The notes under the pieces: generated by a model
What the model saw: only the letters and a program-made list of their open reading frames with translations
Database searches by the model: none
What the model was told of the DNA's origin: nothing
Shown: one piece after another, positions 65 through 8,590 of the stretch
Numbering within the stretch: position 1 is the stretch's first letter
How the letters are laid out: the number at the start of each line of letters is the position of its first letter
IMG/VR virus record: IMGVR_UViG_3300027816_000051
Location: 1 to 64,000 of that record
Direction: 5' to 3' (one strand)
Length of the DNA stretch: 64,000 bases
Position numbers and translations under genes: made by a program

Positions 65-125
65 GTAGACCCGGGCCCAACAAGCCGTTTTCGTACGCAA
101 CGGAAGGGCCCTTTTTAAGGTCTAC
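65..125 (-). ncRNA. Candidate structured spacer RNA (nested rod hairpin)
   Basis: GTAGACC/GGTCTAC, GGGCCC/GGGCCC and CCGTT/AACGG nested stems. Confidence 0.4.
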
Positions 126-526
126 TTACTTTGATATCTCCATTTCCTACCCTTACCTCTTCGACCAAAAAATTCTGTTAAAGAATGACAGTTAGGACAG
201 AGTAACTCAACATTTGATAAATCATGATTATGTGGGTTACCATCTATATGATTAATTTGGATTGGGACTATCCCTGTATGTTCATTCACTTTATCCCATT
301 CACAAACCATACATTTTTCACCAAATTTTTCTATCAAATATTTTTTTGTTATCTCGTGGATTGTGTCACATCTTGTATATCTTTCAAAATTATTTTCCTC
401 TAAAGATTTGAAAATATTTTTTCTTTGATATTCGAATTGACACTTATTATTACAGTAAAGATTCCTATTAGGAATTTCACAACCACAATTCAAACATTGT
501 TTTTCTTTTTTTTCTCTATTTCTCAT
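122..526 (-). CDS. HNH endonuclease (free-standing, inside tRNA array)
   Basis: CxxC pairs plus C-terminal QINHIDGNPHNHDLSNVELLCPNCHS HNH motif. Confidence 0.9.
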   Translation of the reverse strand: MRNREKKEKQCLNCGCEIPNRNLYCNNKCQFEYQRKNIFKSLEENNFERYTRCDTIHEITKKYLIEKFGEKCMVCEWDKVNEHTGIVPIQINHIDGNPHNHDLSNVELLCPNCHSLTEFFGRRGKGRKWRYQSK

Positions 527-2298: not shown

Positions 2299-2305
2299 AT
2301 TAAAA

Positions 2306-2445
2306 AAGATAGTGATGGAGTACCCGTCTCGCTCCAATCTTAACGGCTTCTTCTGAGTTTTATCAGTGCACCGGCCGAGGGTGATGAACACTATGAACCT
2401 TACAACTACTTTGTCGACTTTCATTGTAAGAGTGACCACTATCTT
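2306..2445 (-). ncRNA. Candidate multibranch ncRNA (~140 nt)
   Basis: Perfect 9-bp closing stem AAGATAGTG/CACTATCTT enclosing CTTACAA/TTGTAAG, CGGC/GCCG, CTGA/TCAG and TGGAG/CTCCA stems. Confidence 0.55.
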
Positions 2446-2447
2446 AG

Positions 2448-2519
2448 TAGGCCCACCAAGACTCGAACTTGGAACATCTCATTAGAAGTGAGAAGTTATA
2501 TCCCTTTAACTATGGGCCC
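2448..2519 (-). tRNA. tRNA-Arg(TCT)
   Basis: TCTCA CTTCTAA TGAGA anticodon arm. Confidence 0.95.
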
Positions 2520-2522
2520 ATT

Positions 2523-2724
2523 AAAATGAAAACCTCCTTCTACGCTCACCGTAGTTGTAGATTTGATTGGACATAGTTTACTGTCCACCTGTTGACGTGC
2601 ACATCAGAGCAGGGTCCATCACAGTTCACTTTGGGTCATGTAACTCATTTGGGTAGCTAATCCCAAGAGCCAAAGTTTCTTTCAACGGTGCTAATCCGTC
2701 CTCTGTAAGGAGTTTTTCATTTTT
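2523..2724 (-). ncRNA. Candidate multibranch ncRNA (~200 nt)
   Basis: 16/17-bp terminal stem; several internal hairpins, two with ATTAGC loops. Confidence 0.6.
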
Positions 2725-2725
2725 G

Positions 2726-2810
2726 TACCGAGGATGGGAGTCGAACCCACACGAACATTACTGTCCAAGGGATTTTAAGTCCCTCATGTCTACCATTCCA
2801 TCACCTCGGC
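2726..2810 (-). tRNA. tRNA-Leu(TAA)
   Basis: AGGGA CTTAAAA TCCCT; long variable arm. Confidence 0.95.
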
Positions 2811-2821
2811 ATTTACCAATT

Positions 2822-2840
2822 CCAATATGTCAAAGAACAA
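2822..2840 (-). promoter_or_regulatory. boxA-like antitermination element
   Basis: TTGTTCTTTGACATATTGG, identical to 5482-5500; resembles rrn boxA. Confidence 0.6.
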
Positions 2841-2871
2841 ATCTAATCAAAATATAAACAACAAAATCTTA

Positions 2872-2906
2872 AAAACAAAAAACCCGAACTTTTTTTGAGT
2901 TCGGGT
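2872..2906 (-). terminator. Intrinsic terminator of tRNA leader 1 (attenuator-like)
   Basis: ACCCGAACT-loop-AGTTCGGGT followed by T-rich tract. Confidence 0.8.
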
Positions 2907-2930
2907 CTTCTTATTAGTAGGTTAAGTTCC

Positions 2931-3035
2931 TTACACTTTTAAAAACTCCGAACATGGGTCACATAAATATATACCTCTCCCATTACCACTTAGTGGGTTG
3001 TTCAAGGGTTGTTGTATGTAAACCATTTTCATCAT
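2931..3035 (-). CDS. Putative leader peptide (34 aa, MMKMVYIQQPLNNPLSGNGRGIYLCDPCSEFLKV)
   Basis: Read by hand; lies between a consensus promoter and a terminator; its 3' end contains a strand complementary to the terminator 5' arm. Confidence 0.55.
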   Translation of the reverse strand: MMKMVYIQQPLNNPLSGNGRGIYLCDPCSEFLKV

Positions 3036-3052
3036 TTTGTTTATAACTATCA

Positions 3053-3083
3053 CAAAGATACAAAAAGTTTTTTAATTTCCAAG
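3053..3083 (-). promoter_or_regulatory. Bacteroidota sigma70-type promoter
   Basis: CTTG-N19-TATCTTTG. Confidence 0.8.
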
Positions 3084-3099
3084 TTTTTTTAAAAAAAAA

Positions 3100-3342
3100 T
3101 TAAAATAAATCTTCACACCATATTGGAGTCTTTTCACCAACGTAAGAACCGGAAACATTAAATTCAAAATATTCTACCGCTTCTGTCATATCCATTCCTT
3201 GATTCATAAGTATAGTGATACACTTCTCAACAGAATAGATTAATCTCATTGAAGATGTTTCAATTCCTATTACCGCATCATCAAATCCATCAGCAATTAA
3301 GATTTGTTCATCTTCGTATTGTTCTAAAATTTTTTCTAACAT
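3100..3342 (-). CDS. Hypothetical phage protein
   Basis: Start moved to MLEKIL (3342); ADGFDDAVIG...EYFEFNV..SYVGE.TPI is a protein-like pattern; upstream part of the track ORF is tRNA-Glu. Confidence 0.8.
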   Translation of the reverse strand: MLEKILEQYEDEQILIADGFDDAVIGIETSSMRLIYSVEKCITILMNQGMDMTEAVEYFEFNVSGSYVGEKTPIWCEDLF

Positions 3343-3370
3343 ATTGGTTTTTTTTAATTTAATTTCAGTG

Positions 3371-3442
3371 TAGCCCGACGGGGAATCGAACCCCGCTTTC
3401 ATCCGTGAAAGGGACGTGTCCTAACCGATAGACGACCGGGCC
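3371..3442 (-). tRNA. tRNA-Glu(TTC)
   Basis: CGTCC CTTTCAC GGATG anticodon arm. Confidence 0.93.
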
Positions 3443-3536: not shown

Positions 3537-3540
3537 AATT

Positions 3541-3746
3541 ACCCCACCTGAGATTACGGTGAGTAGTCATTTCGGTTTATTTTCTTTCAAACAACCTGAA
3601 GGGCGTCCCCGTTAAAAAAAGTCAACACTACTGGGAGGAGGTGTGTCGCTCTCCTTTGTTCCCATGAAGTCCCACTCGCGCCGTAGACTTTCTGCGGAAT
3701 CATTCTTAAAGTCTTGATTCGAAGACTCTGAGTATCTCTTACTCAT
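3541..3746 (-). ncRNA. Candidate structured ncRNA (~205 nt)
   Basis: GC-richer non-coding spacer with hairpins TGAGTA/TACTCA, AGTCTT/AAGACT, GGAG/CTCC, AGTAGT/ACTACT, CTCACC/GGTGGG. Confidence 0.45.
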
Positions 3747-3748
3747 TG

Positions 3749-3900: not shown

Positions 3901-3906
3901 AATAGT

Positions 3907-3990
3907 GGGTCAGAGTAGTCACGGCCACCTCTGTTCCTTCTGACCCTTGTCATAACCGTGGCAAGATGTGGCTCGACCCTAATTATGACC
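3907..3990 (-). ncRNA. Candidate two-hairpin RNA with loop-loop complementarity
   Basis: GTCATAA/TTATGAC and GGGTCAGA/TCTGACCC stems; loops carry GCCAC/GTGGC and CACGG/CCGTG complements. Confidence 0.5.
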
Positions 3991-3995
3991 ATTTG

Positions 3996-5180: not shown

Positions 5181-5190
5181 ATGAAAGGAA

Positions 5191-5313
5191 AGAGGAAGAT
5201 GGTTCAGTGGACATCCTCTTTTACGATTGGCGTTACTTCAGGTGAATATCTGCAAACTCCGAATACATCATCCAATATTCACTCTCGAGATATTGATGTA
5301 TCATTCCCCAATC
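5191..5313 (-). ncRNA. Candidate pseudoknot/switch RNA
   Basis: GATTGG/CCAATC closing stem; crossing TACATCA/TGATGTA and GTGAATAT/ATATTCAC stems; trailing GAGGA/TCCTC hairpin. Confidence 0.5.
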
Positions 5314-5321
5314 AACCTTTG

Positions 5322-6179: not shown

Positions 6180-6677
6180 GTGATGAAGAGACTGCCCATC
6201 ATATTATTATTATTTCTAATATCATTTGGATTTTCGAATCTGAATGCCCAAACTATTGTTGTTGATACGGTAATCAATAACATTAAAATTGGTCCGTTCA
6301 CCGAAAATAAGAATTTGGCTTTCGGTGTTAAAAATATAATTGAAGAAATCATCAATGAACAGGATAGTTTAATTCTGATTACAGATAAAAATAAAGCAGA
6401 CTACAAAATTAAAGTTGAACTCATATTTTTTGACATTGTAACGACTAACTCGGGGGTTAGTATTTTTCACGAAGACAAAACAACCACCGTCATAAGAATG
6501 AAAGGTGTATTGTACAAAGGTGATAAAAAAATTAAACAGGAATTTTCGGAAGGTAAATCAACCGAAATTTCAACCTCAACCATAATGATTGATGAGGGTG
6601 GTAAATTCAATCAACAATCTGCTAGTTCGGCATTAAAGAAAACAACTCAAAACCTAATAAACAAACTAATACTATGA
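6180..6677 (+). CDS. Exported protein, probable CsgG/TolB-N-like fold
   Basis: Sec signal peptide; C-terminal G.S.....KFNQQSASSALKK parallels the CsgG-like protein at 9477. Confidence 0.6.
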   Translation: MMKRLPIILLLFLISFGFSNLNAQTIVVDTVINNIKIGPFTENKNLAFGVKNIIEEIINEQDSLILITDKNKADYKIKVELIFFDIVTTNSGVSIFHEDKTTTVIRMKGVLYKGDKKIKQEFSEGKSTEISTSTIMIDEGGKFNQQSASSALKKTTQNLINKLIL

Positions 6678-8590
6678 AAAAATTATTATTTATCCTAACC
6701 GCGTTAATTTTTACGACGACCGCGTTTTCTCAAACTACGCCACAGATTGGTAATCCTGTTGCGTATAAAACAATCAAAAGGGGTGACACCCTTGATGTTG
6801 TGTTTAAATACACACCAGCATCTTCTGTTGATGTTAGAACTTTCCAAGTTGATTTTCAATATAGAAAACAACTTTTCACTCACGTATCAACAACTGTCGA
6901 CCCAACTGTGAGTACTATGACACCAGCACTTTCGATTAAGTTCTTTAACAACTACAAATACTCAAGCTACAGTTCGGGAACTGGTTTGTACTCATATTCA
7001 ACGGATACAAATTACACTGTGGCAAGAAACTTTTTGGTTTTGTCAAGTGGTTCTCAAATCACCCAAGACACCTTTTTGATTCACAACAAATTTATCATCA
7101 ACGATGTTGAATCGAACTTCGACGCGGACAGTGTTGAAATAAACTGGGCTCGAATGTTCAAATATGACGGTACTACAATAGGTGATAACATTGCAATCTT
7201 AGATGTTCAAGACATGCATCTTGAACTTTTGGGTAACTTGGTTATCAGTGGTGTTGTTGAATTACCGCCAACAATGAAACTAAATGGTAGAAGACCAACA
7301 GTTATATGTACAAAATACAACACAGGTACATTTGTATCATCAGCACTTTGTGACACTGCGGGTTTCTACTCACTTAACAACGTAGATAAAAATACTAAGT
7401 ATAAATTACTTGTAAGATTCCCCGCGGATAGTATGGAAGTTTTCAGAGATTACGCAGTGACAATATCAGACGCGGTAAAAACATATGATGAATATACAGT
7501 AACTGATGTAAACCAAGGATTTGGTCAACAATATTTGAAAAATGGCTTGGCTTATCTAATAGGTGATATGAACCAAAACGGAAAGTTAGATGGTGGTGAC
7601 CCATACTTGATTTATGCAAACGTTAGTGGTATGAAAAAAATTGACACCACAACCATGATTAGAACATTCCACGCTGATGTTTATGATTCATTAGTGTTAG
7701 GTTCAACACAATGGAATGATTGGCCAAATCATTTAACCGCCACCAATTTTATTACTGATAGTGTTGGATTAACTAATAAGACAGTAAACATTAAGTACTT
7801 TATTCAAGGTGATGTTGACAGAACTTACTCATCGAGAGTATGGAACTCATCAGGTGTATTAGTAGCTAAGGCGGTGTTTAAAGGTAAATTAGATGTTGAG
7901 ATACCTAATACCGCATCATCAGGTAATCAACCAATATACGTACCATTTAATGTAAACACTAATGGTGATAATAATTATGGTCTACAGTTTGAAATGAAAT
8001 ATGATAAAAACAAGGTTAAATTTGAAGAAATCATATCTAATTTTAACGGAGGTCCATGGTTACAGTACGTTACACATGACGCAACTGCTGGTACAATTAG
8101 ATTTGGTGGTATGAATAACCAATTTAAAGATGGTTTAATTGGTCAAGCAACACCATTTAAATTAAAATTTTCACCTATTGGAAATAATGATATTGTGAGT
8201 AATATTTACGTTAGACAATTAATGGACGCATCCGATGAAAGAGGTGACCACTTGAATATTGACTTAGTTAGTAGTGTTGCTGTTATTATGTACAAAATGG
8301 CACCACCTATGAATCAAGACATTGATGAAATTACAGCATCAATTCGTCCAAACCCAACTGGTGGTTGGTTTGAATTAGAAGTAAAATTTCCCAACCCAAA
8401 CATGTCAATGAATGTTTCCATCTATGATAATAGAGGTCAACTAATTAAACAAGTTGGTTCTGTTACCACTAACTATATGGAAACAACTGCCTACAAACAA
8501 ATTGATATGAGTTCTGCATCATCAGGTAATTATTATCTGATTTTGAATAATTATAATAAACAATTAACAAGACAATTTATAAAAGTTTAA
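6674..8590 (+). CDS. T9SS type-A-sorted protein with cohesin-like and dockerin-like modules
   Basis: Signal peptide; GDMNQNGKLDGGDPYLI Ca-loop and later QGDVD; GLQFEMKYDKNKVKFEEI...IRFGG cohesin-like; C-terminal IRPNPT...IYDNRGQLI...GNYYLIL...QFIKV sorting domain. Confidence 0.8.
   Translation: MKKLLFILTALIFTTTAFSQTTPQIGNPVAYKTIKRGDTLDVVFKYTPASSVDVRTFQVDFQYRKQLFTHVSTTVDPTVSTMTPALSIKFFNNYKYSSYSSGTGLYSYSTDTNYTVARNFLVLSSGSQITQDTFLIHNKFIINDVESNFDADSVEINWARMFKYDGTTIGDNIAILDVQDMHLELLGNLVISGVVELPPTMKLNGRRPTVICTKYNTGTFVSSALCDTAGFYSLNNVDKNTKYKLLVRFPADSMEVFRDYAVTISDAVKTYDEYTVTDVNQGFGQQYLKNGLAYLIGDMNQNGKLDGGDPYLIYANVSGMKKIDTTTMIRTFHADVYDSLVLGSTQWNDWPNHLTATNFITDSVGLTNKTVNIKYFIQGDVDRTYSSRVWNSSGVLVAKAVFKGKLDVEIPNTASSGNQPIYVPFNVNTNGDNNYGLQFEMKYDKNKVKFEEIISNFNGGPWLQYVTHDATAGTIRFGGMNNQFKDGLIGQATPFKLKFSPIGNNDIVSNIYVRQLMDASDERGDHLNIDLVSSVAVIMYKMAPPMNQDIDEITASIRPNPTGGWFELEVKFPNPNMSMNVSIYDNRGQLIKQVGSVTTNYMETTAYKQIDMSSASSGNYYLILNNYNKQLTRQFIKV

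What the first reader, a model, noticed from the sequence alone, without database searches (positions are those of the whole stretch)
2523..2724. ~200-nt ornate RNA with 16/17-bp terminal stem and two ATTAGC hairpin loops
Seen (minus): AAAATGAAAA-A-CTCCTT pairs with AAGGAG-G-TTTTCATTTT. Inside are ACGG-ATTAGCA-CCGT (2685-2699), TTGGG-ATTAGCTA-CCCAA (2649-2666) within a CTTTGG/CCAAAG stem, and TGGACA/TGTCCA. Repeated loop sequences are typical of protein-binding or sponge RNAs. Known: ornate ncRNAs such as GOLLD occur in phage tRNA clusters, but this is much shorter.
Basis: partly seen in the sequence, partly recalled or inferred. Interest (0 to 1): 0.6.

Follow-up and report, generated by a model that had tools for sequence, protein, structure and literature searches.

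The report
tRNA-linked full-length freshwater-1 phage RNA
This is a real, roughly 200-nt, highly folded non-coding RNA that a freshwater jumbo phage encodes directly behind a tRNA gene; its 62-nt core is the catalogued 'freshwater-1' motif, but the conserved RNA is three times larger than the catalogue entry and its function is still unknown.

Summary
In detail: window 2523-2724 (minus strand) folds into a long terminal stem enclosing several hairpins, two of which carry ATTAGC loops.

Rfam already knows the middle of it. RF02979 'freshwater-1' matches 2562-2623 at 84.7 bits (cut-off 72).

137 unique homologues from freshwater phage and metagenome contigs show that the whole ~200 nt is the conserved unit. 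It has nine covarying helices: 96.9% of cells pair, against 32-43% in slid controls.

The RNA almost always starts at the 3' end of a same-strand tRNA (127 of 150 loci). It is essentially absent from cellular genomes. Short contigs from four metatranscriptome libraries cover it.

The 'two identical loops = sponge' idea fails. Only about 7 of 130 homologues have ATTAGC in both loops.

Instead, the second loop toggles between two six-base palindromes, UAGCUA and UAAUUA, about 10 times on the tree. The P5 apex is palindromic in five different versions. I read this as RNA-RNA kissing, possibly self-assembly.

Best reading: a stable phage RNA co-transcribed with tRNAs, excised by tRNA-processing enzymes and acting in trans. 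It is a member of a known family with unknown function, and the family's boundaries need revising.

A second, uncatalogued conserved RNA lies next door at 2299-2446.

The parts
2523..2724 (-). The complete RNA, about 202 nt: the full-length form of the freshwater-1 motif, running from the 5' strand of P1 to the 3' strand of P1.
   Evidence: nhmmer with a full-length profile finds 169 hits (137 unique). 105 of the 123 untruncated ones cover the whole model. Covariation supports nine helices.
2707..2724 (-). P1 5' strand (A-rich). It begins 1 nt after tRNA-Leu.
   Evidence: All 8 P1 pairs counted show compensatory changes. P1 is 12-17 bp long in homologues.
2523..2539 (-). P1 3' strand (U-rich). 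It ends 3 nt before tRNA-Arg.
2702..2706 (-). P2 5' strand, ACAGA. It stacks on P1 and closes the three-way junction of P2, P3 and P4.
   Evidence: It pairs with 2621-2624. Column pair 22-116 switches G-C to U-A in 13 of 43 sequences, and 99.5% of cells pair.
2684..2700 (-). P3 hairpin with loop A, AUUAGCA. The GC in the loop is invariant.
   Evidence: 4 of 5 pairs are compensatory. Loop A counts: ATTAGCA 64, ATTAGCG 22, AATAGCG 11 of 130.
2676..2683 (-). Junction J3/4, GAAAGAAA. It holds the near-invariant UGAAAG when read with the preceding U.
   Evidence: Invariant columns in alignment A1.
2629..2675 (-). P4 arm. It consists of outer stem CUUUGG/CCAAAG, inner stems P4a (CUC/GAG) and P4b (UUGGG/CCCAA), loop B AUUAGCUA with the palindrome UAGCUA at 2654-2659, and the conserved internal-loop sequence AUGAC.
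   Evidence: 5 of 6 outer pairs are compensatory. P4a varies as CUC/GAG, CUUA/UAAG, CUCUC/GAGAG and CUUC/GAAG. For loop B statistics.
2562..2623 (-). The Rfam freshwater-1 core. It contains invariant GAUGGACC, hairpin P5 (2588-2613, apex GUGCAC at 2597-2602), hairpin P6 (2568-2587) and AAUCAAA.
   Evidence: RF02979 scores 84.7 bits against a gathering score of 72, E = 2.4e-18, covering model positions 1-62 of 62.
2540..2554 (-). P7 hairpin, CUACG-GUGAG-CGUAG.
   Evidence: 4 of 5 pairs are compensatory and 100% of cells pair. P7 is absent in a minority of homologues such as L010 and L018.
2725..2810 (-). Upstream tRNA-Leu(UAA). Its 3' processing would create the RNA's 5' end.
   Evidence: ARAGORN and Rfam. 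A same-strand tRNA abuts the element in 127 of 150 loci.
2447..2519 (-). Downstream tRNA-Arg(UCU). RNase P cleavage at its 5' end would create the RNA's 3' end.
   Evidence: A downstream tRNA lies within 15 nt in 57 of 127 loci.
2838..2845 (-). TAGATTTG, matching the Bacteroidota -7 promoter motif TAnnTTTG, 27 nt upstream of tRNA-Leu. This is the inferred promoter of the unit that carries tRNA-Leu, the RNA and tRNA-Arg.
   Evidence: The same motif sits just upstream of the tRNA in L003, L008, L024, L048 and L115, and 7 nt upstream of the element itself in L010. It is not statistically enriched locally, so this is an inference.
2877..2911 (-). Intrinsic terminator of the preceding transcription unit. 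It separates that unit from the one carrying the tRNA and the RNA.
   Evidence: Terminator scan: 14-pair stem followed by a T run.

Best explanation
Window 2523-2724(-) encodes the full-length form of the phage 'freshwater-1' RNA, a roughly 200-nt stable non-coding RNA acting in trans.

Production. It is transcribed together with tRNAs, here from a Bacteroidota-type promoter upstream of tRNA-Leu. It is cut out by the host's tRNA-processing enzymes: 3'-end processing of the upstream tRNA makes its 5' end, and RNase P at the downstream tRNA (or a terminator) makes its 3' end. This step is inferred, not shown.

Fold. Its two ends are clamped by the 12-17 bp helix P1. Inside are two domains. One is a three-way junction (P2, P3, P4) carrying invariant UGAAAG and AUGAC. 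The other is the known core (GAUGGACC, P5, P6, AAAUC) plus P7.

Loops. The apical loop of P4b and the apex of P5 are self-complementary palindromes, and evolution keeps them palindromic. I infer that they make RNA-RNA kissing contacts. The most likely options are contacts between copies (dimer or closed oligomer) or between loop A and loop B. The RNA would then work as a folded RNA particle, like the larger GOLLD and ROOL RNAs of phage tRNA islands, rather than as a sponge with repeated protein sites. Its cellular target is unknown.

My confidence by layer:
- Real structured RNA belonging to freshwater-1: about 0.95.
- tRNA-linked excision: about 0.75.
- Kissing or self-assembly: about 0.35.

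The single confidence figure given for this explanation (0.6) is for the statement as a whole.
For: - Family: Rfam RF02979 matches at 84.7 bits, above its cut-off.
- Extent: all core-containing loci carry the same flanks. 105 of 123 untruncated unique homologues cover the whole 204-position profile.
- Structure: nine helices, 96.9% of cells paired, 33 of 46 pairs compensatory, 0 of 500 shuffles as good, slid controls 32-43%.
- Not coding: no ORF of 50 aa or more overlaps the interval, and there is no tRNA or tmRNA call.
- tRNA linkage: a same-strand tRNA ends within -7 to +3 nt of the profile start (which lies about 3 nt before P1) in 127 of 150 loci. Most of the remaining 23 have an atypical tRNA-like T-arm and acceptor stem at that place. 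L010 has a TATCTTTG promoter motif 7 nt upstream instead. So the RNA's 5' end coincides with the P1 start in every context.
- Phage origin: the window encodes terminase, portal, major head protein and DNA polymerase, and a protein with a T9SS sorting domain. Among one genome for each of 185,579 prokaryote species, only one true hit appears, on a 2.9-kb contig of a lake MAG.
- Expression: contigs of four metatranscriptome libraries from four studies match exactly at 2527-2709, 2533-2754 and 2443-2709, and with three mismatches at 2544-2753. Nearby stretches 1800-1860 and 3081-3385 have none.
- Loop B palindrome: the central dinucleotide of its hexamer switches AU to GC, and these are adjacent positions. 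This is the 4th-strongest covariation signal among all column pairs in 105 sequences. The tree needs about 10 such switches, at least 7 of them forced by well-supported branches.
- P5 palindrome: the apex is GUGCAC, UGGCCA, GUCGAC, AUGCAU or UGUACA, with one wobble exception.
- Precedent: GOLLD and ROOL, from phage tRNA islands, and RNAs under 200 nt assemble through kissing loops (PMC12286853; bioRxiv 10.64898/2026.07.01.735769).
Against: - The RNA evidence is limited. Logan contigs give no strand, ends or abundance, and DNA carry-over is not excluded. Some contigs bridge the tRNA/element junctions, so processing is inferred, not shown.
- 28 of 130 homologues have a non-palindromic loop B (RUCGCAA). 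Homodimer kissing through loop B therefore cannot be universal.
- Loop A and loop B types mix freely, so intramolecular A-B pairing is not supported by covariation either.
- A perfectly palindromic hairpin apex could also arise from template-switch mutation at DNA inverted repeats, without selection.
- No target or partner protein was found.
- TAnnTTTG is not enriched locally: 4 observed against 3 expected.
Confidence: 0.6

Rival explanations
1. A cis-acting ribozyme that matures the upstream tRNA. It would cleave at its own 5' end to release the tRNA 3' end, doing the job proposed for theta (HDV-like) ribozymes.
For: The element starts within a few nucleotides of a tRNA 3' end in about 90% of loci, including loci with a single tRNA. 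It has many invariant junction nucleotides and an ornate fold. [quoted passage not shown]
Against: - No Rfam ribozyme family matches, even at E = 10, and the fold is not a nested double pseudoknot.
- There is only one copy per array of 20 or more tRNAs, while all the other tRNAs do without it.
- A 17-bp helix that clamps both ends suggests a stable product rather than a discarded trailer.
- L010 has a promoter-like motif (TATCTTTG) 7 nt upstream and L257 has no tRNA directly upstream; both appear to lack an upstream tRNA.
- RNA-library contigs bridge the tRNA-Leu/element junction.
Confidence: 0.1
2. One reading: a protein-binding or sponge RNA whose repeated AUUAGC loops titrate a host or phage protein.
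For: Loop A (AUUAGCR) is conserved in about 86 of 130 homologues, with GC invariant. In this window loop B repeats it. L003-type loci carry a further downstream hairpin with loop GAUUAGCGUU. The invariant single-stranded segments could be protein sites.
Against: Both loops read ATTAGC in only about 7 of 130 homologues. Loop B is usually AGUAAUUA, AGUAGCUA or RUCGCAA. The pattern of change in loop B, a double substitution that preserves a palindrome, points to a base-pairing constraint rather than a sequence-readout constraint.
Confidence: 0.15
3. An RNA that binds tRNA or other RNA. It would act as a decoy or regulator, pairing through loop A (which contains NGC followed by a purine, codon-like) or through GAUGGACC with a tRNA or another host RNA.
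For: It is always embedded in tRNA arrays. UUAGCA in loop A is complementary to a UGCUAA anticodon loop of the tRNA-Ser(GCU) type (my own reading of the sequence). Phage tRNA islands are thought to counter host attacks on tRNAs (general knowledge).
Against: The first 'codon' position varies (AGC, UGC, CGC), which would change the tRNA identity. No complement to the invariant segments was found among the window's tRNAs or elsewhere in the window beyond chance. No covariation with a partner could be tested.
Confidence: 0.07
4. Not an RNA gene at all, but a DNA-level element: a MITE-like insertion with terminal inverted repeats, or a cis terminator or insulator of the tRNA operon.
For: It has terminal inverted repeats of 17 bp, sits next to many different tRNA types, and has a U-rich 3' arm.
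Against: The terminal repeats covary instead of being conserved in sequence. G-U pairs are tolerated on one strand only. There is one copy per genome. The interior has about 50 invariant positions and seven further covarying helices. It is present in RNA libraries.
Confidence: 0.03

Closest known systems
freshwater-1 RNA motif (Rfam RF02979; a bioinformatic discovery from freshwater metagenomes, function unknown)
   Same: The window's 2562-2623(-) matches all 62 model positions at 84.7 bits, above the cut-off of 72. The habitat is the same: the sequencing runs and contigs are from freshwater or lakes.
   Different: The Rfam model covers only P5, P6 and their flanks. The conserved RNA also has P1, P2, P3, P4, P4a, P4b and P7, and is about 200 nt long. 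At its gathering score the 62-nt model fails to list 6 of 14 divergent full-length homologues. I could find no paper text on the motif, so what its discoverers said about tRNA proximity comes only from my memory.
GOLLD and ROOL RNAs (large ornate RNAs of phages and prophages, often near tRNA islands; RNA-only nanocages by cryo-EM, PMC12286853)
   Same: Phage-encoded, located in tRNA arrays, ornate multi-helix fold, unknown function. GOLLD is present in the same arrays in L067 and L132. Kissing loops hold those assemblies together.
   Different: This RNA is 3-4 times smaller and shows no sequence or model similarity to them: there is no GOLLD match in this phage and no Rfam hit other than freshwater-1. 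Assembly of this RNA is only inferred.
Phage T4 RNAC and RNAD
   Same: [quoted passage not shown] This is the same genomic logic: a non-tRNA RNA riding in a phage tRNA operon.
   Different: No sequence relationship was tested or is expected. The host (E. coli) and the sizes differ. I did not fetch or fold the T4 genes.
Theta (minimal HDV-like) ribozymes next to phage tRNAs (PMC10879173)
   Same: They lie immediately 3' of phage tRNA genes (77% within +/-1 nt). The phages are assigned to Bacteroidota and Bacillota hosts.
   Different: Theta ribozymes are minimal HDV-like ribozymes (a nested double pseudoknot, from my general knowledge) from gut phages, often beside suppressor tRNAs. This RNA is about 200 nt, has a different topology and clamps its own two ends. 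Self-cleavage is untested.
Kissing-loop dimerisation or assembly elements: HIV-1 DIS and phi29 pRNA (from my own knowledge), and short phage-associated RNAs such as manA (bioRxiv 10.64898/2026.07.01.735769)
   Same: Loop B consists of two unpaired bases followed by a six-base palindrome, which is the DIS layout. The palindrome is preserved by double substitutions. The manA oligomers are held by intermolecular loop-loop pairs.
   Different: No experimental evidence of dimers exists here. 22% of homologues lack the loop B palindrome.

Membership tests
freshwater-1 RNA (RF02979) | Covariance-model score at or above the curated gathering score (72 bits) over the full model. | tested here: met
   84.7 bits, model positions 1-62 of 62, E = 2.4e-18, at 2562-2623(-).
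freshwater-1 RNA (RF02979) | Two adjacent hairpins flanked by conserved single-stranded sequence (UGUGAUGGACC ... AAUNAAA). | tested here: met
   The cmscan alignment shows both hairpins and all flanks at posterior probability 1.00. Pair counts for both hairpins (P5, helices 6-7; P6, helix 8) are 97.5-100% paired.
freshwater-1 RNA (RF02979) | Occurrence in freshwater or aquatic metagenomic sequence rather than in classified organisms (as I recall the family's description). | tested here: met
   All homologues come from IMG/VR or metagenome contigs, and the runs are labelled freshwater or lake. There was no match in 50,697 GenBank phage records by blastn. Among species-representative genomes there was one mis-binned-looking 2.9-kb MAG contig.
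GOLLD RNA (RF02032) | Match to the GOLLD covariance model. | tested here: not met
   No GOLLD match in the window or in the 288-kb record. GOLLD is a separate gene in L067 and L132.
HDV-like / theta self-cleaving ribozymes | HDV-like nested double-pseudoknot fold. | tested here: not met
   No HDV-family or other ribozyme model matches 2515-2730, even at E = 10. The covariation-supported topology is P1 and P2 enclosing hairpins.
HDV-like / theta self-cleaving ribozymes | Cleavage site directly adjacent to a tRNA 3' end. | tested here: inconclusive
   Adjacency is met: 127 of 150 loci have a tRNA within -7 to +3 nt. Whether any cleavage is autocatalytic cannot be told from sequence.
tRNA / tmRNA | Cloverleaf or tRNA-like domain recognised by ARAGORN or Rfam. 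| tested here: not met
   No call inside 2523-2724.
Other housekeeping structured RNAs (RNase P RNA, 6S, SRP, Y RNA) | Match to the respective Rfam models. | tested here: not met
   Only freshwater-1 is reported at E up to 10. My by-eye comparison with RNase P conserved regions gave no consistent P4-type pairing.
Kissing-loop self-assembling RNAs | A self-complementary loop sequence kept self-complementary by covariation. | tested here: met
   Loop B is UAAUUA or UAGCUA in 82 of 130 homologues. The adjacent central positions covary (GC 57, AU 48; 4th-ranked corrected mutual information), with about 10 switches on the tree. The P5 apex occurs as five palindromic versions. Exception: 28 of 130 have RUCGCAA.
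Kissing-loop self-assembling RNAs | Demonstrated dimer or oligomer formation. | not testable with these tools
   This needs native gel, SEC-MALS or cryo-EM of the transcript.

The most novel reading that the evidence does not exclude
Full-length freshwater-1 RNA is a self-assembling RNA. Its two palindromic apical loops (P4b and P5) would make intermolecular kissing contacts that build a dimer or a closed multi-copy particle. That would make it a 200-nt miniature of the GOLLD and ROOL nanocages, made from the same phage tRNA operons and possibly working with its conserved neighbour RNA at 2299-2446.
Probability: 0.3. Interest if true: 0.75.

Novelty: new member of a known kind. Interest (0 to 1): 0.5.

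Why it matters
Phage tRNA islands keep yielding elaborate RNAs of unknown purpose, such as GOLLD, ROOL and T4 RNAC/RNAD.

This case shows that a catalogued 62-nt motif is only the middle third of a nine-helix, roughly 200-nt RNA. That RNA is almost always fused to the 3' end of a tRNA, is phage-specific and appears in metatranscriptomes.

Three practical gains follow:
- A full-length model would annotate it better, because the current model misses divergent copies.
- The likely hosts can be narrowed to Bacteroidota.
- The RNA is small enough for direct biochemistry and cryo-EM.

If the palindromic loops do drive assembly, this would be a compact system for asking what RNA particles from phage tRNA islands do.

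Tried and rejected
- Literature on 'freshwater-1': two full-text searches found nothing. The 2017 discovery paper's main text does not mention it, and its supplements are not held.
- GenBank phages: blastn of 2300-2900 matched only the tRNA-Leu part, so no cultured phage carries the element at that sensitivity.
- First loose pattern scan: mostly chance hits, which had to be filtered with an nhmmer profile.
- RNase P-like, hammerhead-like (CUGAUG in P5) and GNRA/11-nt-receptor readings: I considered these by eye and dropped them. The motifs are not conserved across homologues, and no Rfam model matches.
- Pseudoknot search over all column pairs: off-structure signals were isolated and followed the two main clades, and no contiguous pseudoknot helix appeared. 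A lone J3/4-J4/2 pair (G-C/A-U, 82% paired) stays unexplained.
- Intramolecular pairing of loop A with loop B: a 3-4 bp complement exists in each class, but loop types mix freely, so covariation does not support it.
- Hetero-kissing between the P5 apex and the palindromic hairpin of the neighbouring RNA: apex types agree in only 3 of 10 contigs.
- Antisense targets of GAUGGACC or UGAAAG in the window: nothing beyond chance.
- GOLLD in this phage: absent.
- Not done: I built no covariance model, because the nhmmer profile was sufficient. No RNA 3D prediction tool was available.

Full report
**Observation**

On the minus strand, 2523-2724 lies exactly between tRNA-Leu(UAA) (2725-2810) and tRNA-Arg(UCU) (2447-2519). 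These belong to an array of at least 23 same-strand tRNA genes. These are the 16/17-bp terminal stem, the two hairpins with ATTAGC loops, the CTTTGG/CCAAAG stem and the TGGACA/TGTCCA hairpin.

The interval folds better than all 200 shuffles (-59.2 kcal/mol, z = -3.46). The opposite strand also folds well (z = -2.96), so energy does not decide the strand.

**What is already known**

Rfam family RF02979, 'freshwater-1', matches 2562-2623(-) over its whole 62-position model at 84.7 bits (gathering score 72). It is the only non-tRNA family in the 64-kb window, and the only match to the interval even at E = 10. The finding is therefore a member of a catalogued family of unknown function.

I found no paper text on the motif. 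Two searches gave nothing, and the 2017 discovery paper holds it only in supplements that are not available here.

**The conserved unit is about 200 nt, not 62**

I scanned IMG/VR with the core pattern, ran a looser scan filtered with an nhmmer profile of the whole interval, and scanned metagenome contigs once. Together these gave 169 hits, 137 of them unique. Of 123 untruncated unique sequences, 105 cover the entire 204-position profile. Ten lack only the last hairpin.

RNAalifold on 43 diverse sequences (alignment A1, 75% mean column identity) predicts P1 stacked on a helix P2 that the single-sequence fold had missed. P2 is ACAGA pairing with UCUGU. P2 encloses P3 (loop A) and the P4 arm (loop B). 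Then come P5 and P6, which form the Rfam core, and P7.

Counting pairs for this structure gives the following:
- 46 pairs in 9 helices, with 96.9% of cells paired.
- 33 pairs with changes on both sides.
- A covariation score of 0.471.
- No shuffle of 500 reaches these values.
- Sliding the partners by 1-3 columns drops pairing to 32-43% and the score to 0.05-0.08.

Conserved G-U pairs fix the strand as minus. P4a also covaries: CUC/GAG, CUUA/UAAG, CUCUC/GAGAG, CUUC/GAAG.

About 50 positions are invariant, mostly in junctions: UGAAAG, AUGAC, GAUGGACCCUGCUCU, AACAGGUG and AAAUC.

At its gathering score the 62-nt Rfam model does not list 6 of 14 divergent full-length homologues.

**Genomic context**

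The window is part of a 288-kb IMG/VR virus record. It encodes terminase, portal, major head protein, DNA polymerase and helicase, so it is a tailed jumbo phage.

One structural-region protein ends in a T9SS sorting domain, a Bacteroidota hallmark. The Bacteroidota -7 promoter motif TAnnTTTG appears in several places:
- 27 nt upstream of tRNA-Leu in this window, just after an intrinsic terminator.
- Just upstream of the tRNA in several loci that carry only a single tRNA.
- 7 nt upstream of the element itself in L010.

The host assignment is an inference.

The element is single-copy in this phage. It is absent from GenBank phages at blastn sensitivity. Among one genome for each of 185,579 prokaryote species, it appears only on one 2.9-kb contig of a lake MAG.

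**Linkage to tRNA**

In 127 of 150 loci with enough upstream sequence, a same-strand tRNA ends within -7 to +3 nt of the profile start. The tRNA is of 11 different types, most often Leu-UAA, Gly-UCC, Phe-GAA and Tyr-GUA.

Most of the other 23 loci show a T-arm and acceptor stem of an atypical tRNA at the same place. Rfam calls such long tRNAs in L044, L134 and L115. Four loci have an extra 72-nt structured insert between the tRNA and the element. L010 has a promoter-like motif directly upstream instead of a tRNA, and L257 has no tRNA there either.

A downstream tRNA lies within 15 nt in 57 of 127 loci. Elsewhere a terminator-like hairpin or a gene follows.

So the RNA's 5' end coincides with the start of P1 in every context. 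The simplest reading is release by the tRNA 3'-processing enzyme and RNase P, with P1 protecting both ends. This is inferred, not shown.

**Expression**

Six metatranscriptome runs hold part of the stretch. I laid four of them, from four studies. The contigs found were:
- 2527-2709, a whole 183-nt contig, exact match.
- 2533-2754, exact match.
- 2443-2709, a whole 267-nt contig, exact match.
- 2544-2753, three mismatches.

No contig covers 1800-1860 or 3081-3385.

Contigs give no strand, ends or level, and DNA carry-over cannot be excluded. Several contigs bridge the tRNA junctions, so precursor (or DNA) is present.

**The loops**

Loop A is AUUAGCA or AUUAGCG in 86 of 130 unique sequences, with GC invariant.

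Loop B is distributed as follows:

| Loop B | Count of 130 |
|---|---|
| AGUAAUUA | 49 |
| AGUAGCUA | 21 |
| AUUAGCUA | 12 |
| GUCGCAA or AUCGCAA | 28 |

Both loops read ATTAGC in about 7 of 130 sequences. The repeat is therefore specific to this lineage.

In 82 of 130 sequences, loop B is two unpaired bases followed by a six-base palindrome, UAAUUA or UAGCUA. The two differ by a double change at the adjacent central positions (AU to GC). That adjacent-column pair has the 4th-highest corrected mutual information of all column pairs in a 105-sequence alignment, in the same range as true helix pairs.

A tree built without these columns needs about 10 switches between the two states, at least 7 of them forced by well-supported branches. 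Some sequences that are identical elsewhere differ only there, for example L014 against L030 and L022.

Adjacent bases cannot pair with each other within one molecule. The constraint therefore points to pairing with another loop: a second copy, or loop A. Loop A contains both AUUA and UAGC and is 4-bp complementary to either state.

The P5 apex also occurs as five different palindromes (GUGCAC, UGGCCA, GUCGAC, AUGCAU, UGUACA), with a single wobble exception.

There are three points against a simple homodimer model:
- The RUCGCAA class is not palindromic.
- Loop A and loop B types combine freely.
- Perfect palindromes can also arise by template-switch mutation.

I therefore put RNA-RNA kissing or self-assembly at about 0.35. 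Precedents exist. GOLLD and ROOL from phage tRNA islands form cages held by kissing loops (PMC12286853). RNAs under 200 nt, including a motif found in cyanophages, form oligomers through intermolecular loop-loop pairs (bioRxiv 10.64898/2026.07.01.735769).

**Rivals**

- A theta-like tRNA 3'-processing ribozyme (PMC10879173) fits the adjacency. It does not fit the fold, the single copy per array, the end-clamping helix, or the loci that appear to lack an upstream tRNA. I put it at 0.1.
- The sponge reading keeps loop A as a possible protein site but loses its key argument. I put it at 0.15.
- A tRNA-binding decoy (0.07) and a DNA-level element (0.03) have little support.

[quoted passage not shown] They are the oldest analogy for such a gene.

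**Verdict**

It is a member of a known family whose catalogued extent is too short.

The new points are:
- the full nine-helix architecture;
- the near-obligate fusion to a tRNA 3' end;
- the phage-only distribution, with a probable Bacteroidota host;
- the presence in RNA libraries;
- the loops that are kept palindromic.

The function remains unknown. Interest is moderate (0.5).

**Limits**

Noticed in passing
window 2299-2446 (-): A second conserved non-coding RNA candidate, 148 nt, lies between tRNA-Arg(UCU) and tRNA-Pro(UGG). It has no Rfam hit and no tRNA call. Homologues (76-98% identity, full-length or the 3' 80 nt) occur in 9 other distinct phage contigs that also carry the freshwater-1 element, on the same strand. 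Its features are a terminal stem GAUAGUGG/CCAUCACUAUC with compensatory changes, a hairpin with an invariant GUCGAC loop, a hairpin whose apex toggles among GUGCAC, GGGCCC, AGGCCU and AUGCAU, and an invariant UUAAGAUUGGAGCGAGA. An RNA-library contig covers 2323-2556. The fold z-score is only -0.31.
   Followed up: partly
window 2877-3060 (-): A small independent transcription unit. It has a TATCTTTG promoter-like motif at 3053-3060, a 34-codon ORF (MMKMVYIQQPLNN...), and an intrinsic terminator at 2877-2911. An exact 193-nt contig from one RNA library covers 2878-3070.
   Followed up: no
window 5181-5320, 3537-3747, 3901-3994 (-): Other gaps between tRNAs in the array are conserved at 80-85% identity in distinct phage contigs: L066, L097 and L017 for the first, L029 for the second, L082 for the third. 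They may hold further unannotated RNAs or odd tRNAs.
   Followed up: no
L067:2193-2606 (-), L132:3357-3791 (+), L074:7375-7771 (+): GOLLD RNA (325 and 241 bits) and a tmRNA gene share the tRNA arrays that carry the freshwater-1 element in related phage contigs. The window's own 288-kb record has no GOLLD.
   Followed up: partly
L002, L028, L172, L174 (between tRNA-Gly and the element): A conserved insert of about 72 nt (GAGACAUACUUAGUGAGAA...CUCACUAUUGUGUGUCUU), with its own terminal stem, separates the tRNA from the element. L241 has a different insert of about 72 nt at the same place.
   Followed up: no
L115, L234, L265, L163, L221, L134, L044 (directly upstream of the element): Atypical long tRNA-like genes of 99-114 nt, with a normal T-arm and acceptor stem, sit where ARAGORN finds nothing. 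Rfam's tRNA model calls some of them.
   Followed up: no
L003/L004/L013-type loci, about 50-75 nt downstream of the element: After a terminator-like hairpin there is another hairpin, UUAGGAUA-GAUUAGCGUU-UAUCCUAA, whose loop repeats the loop A sequence GAUUAGC.
   Followed up: no
window 6674-8590 (+): A 638-aa phage protein ends in a T9SS C-terminal sorting domain (Por_Secre_tail, E = 3e-8). This hints at a Bacteroidota host.
   Followed up: no
window 122-526 (-): A 134-aa ORF inside the tRNA array has weak HNH endonuclease and treble-clef matches, below the Pfam cut-offs. It may be a homing endonuclease.
   Followed up: no
alignment of 105 sequences, columns 50/156 and 25/155 (J3/4 against J4/2 of the three-way junction): An isolated long-range pair covaries G-C/A-U (82% paired). 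A neighbouring pair switches A-A to G-G. These may be tertiary contacts in the junction or a clade effect.
   Followed up: no
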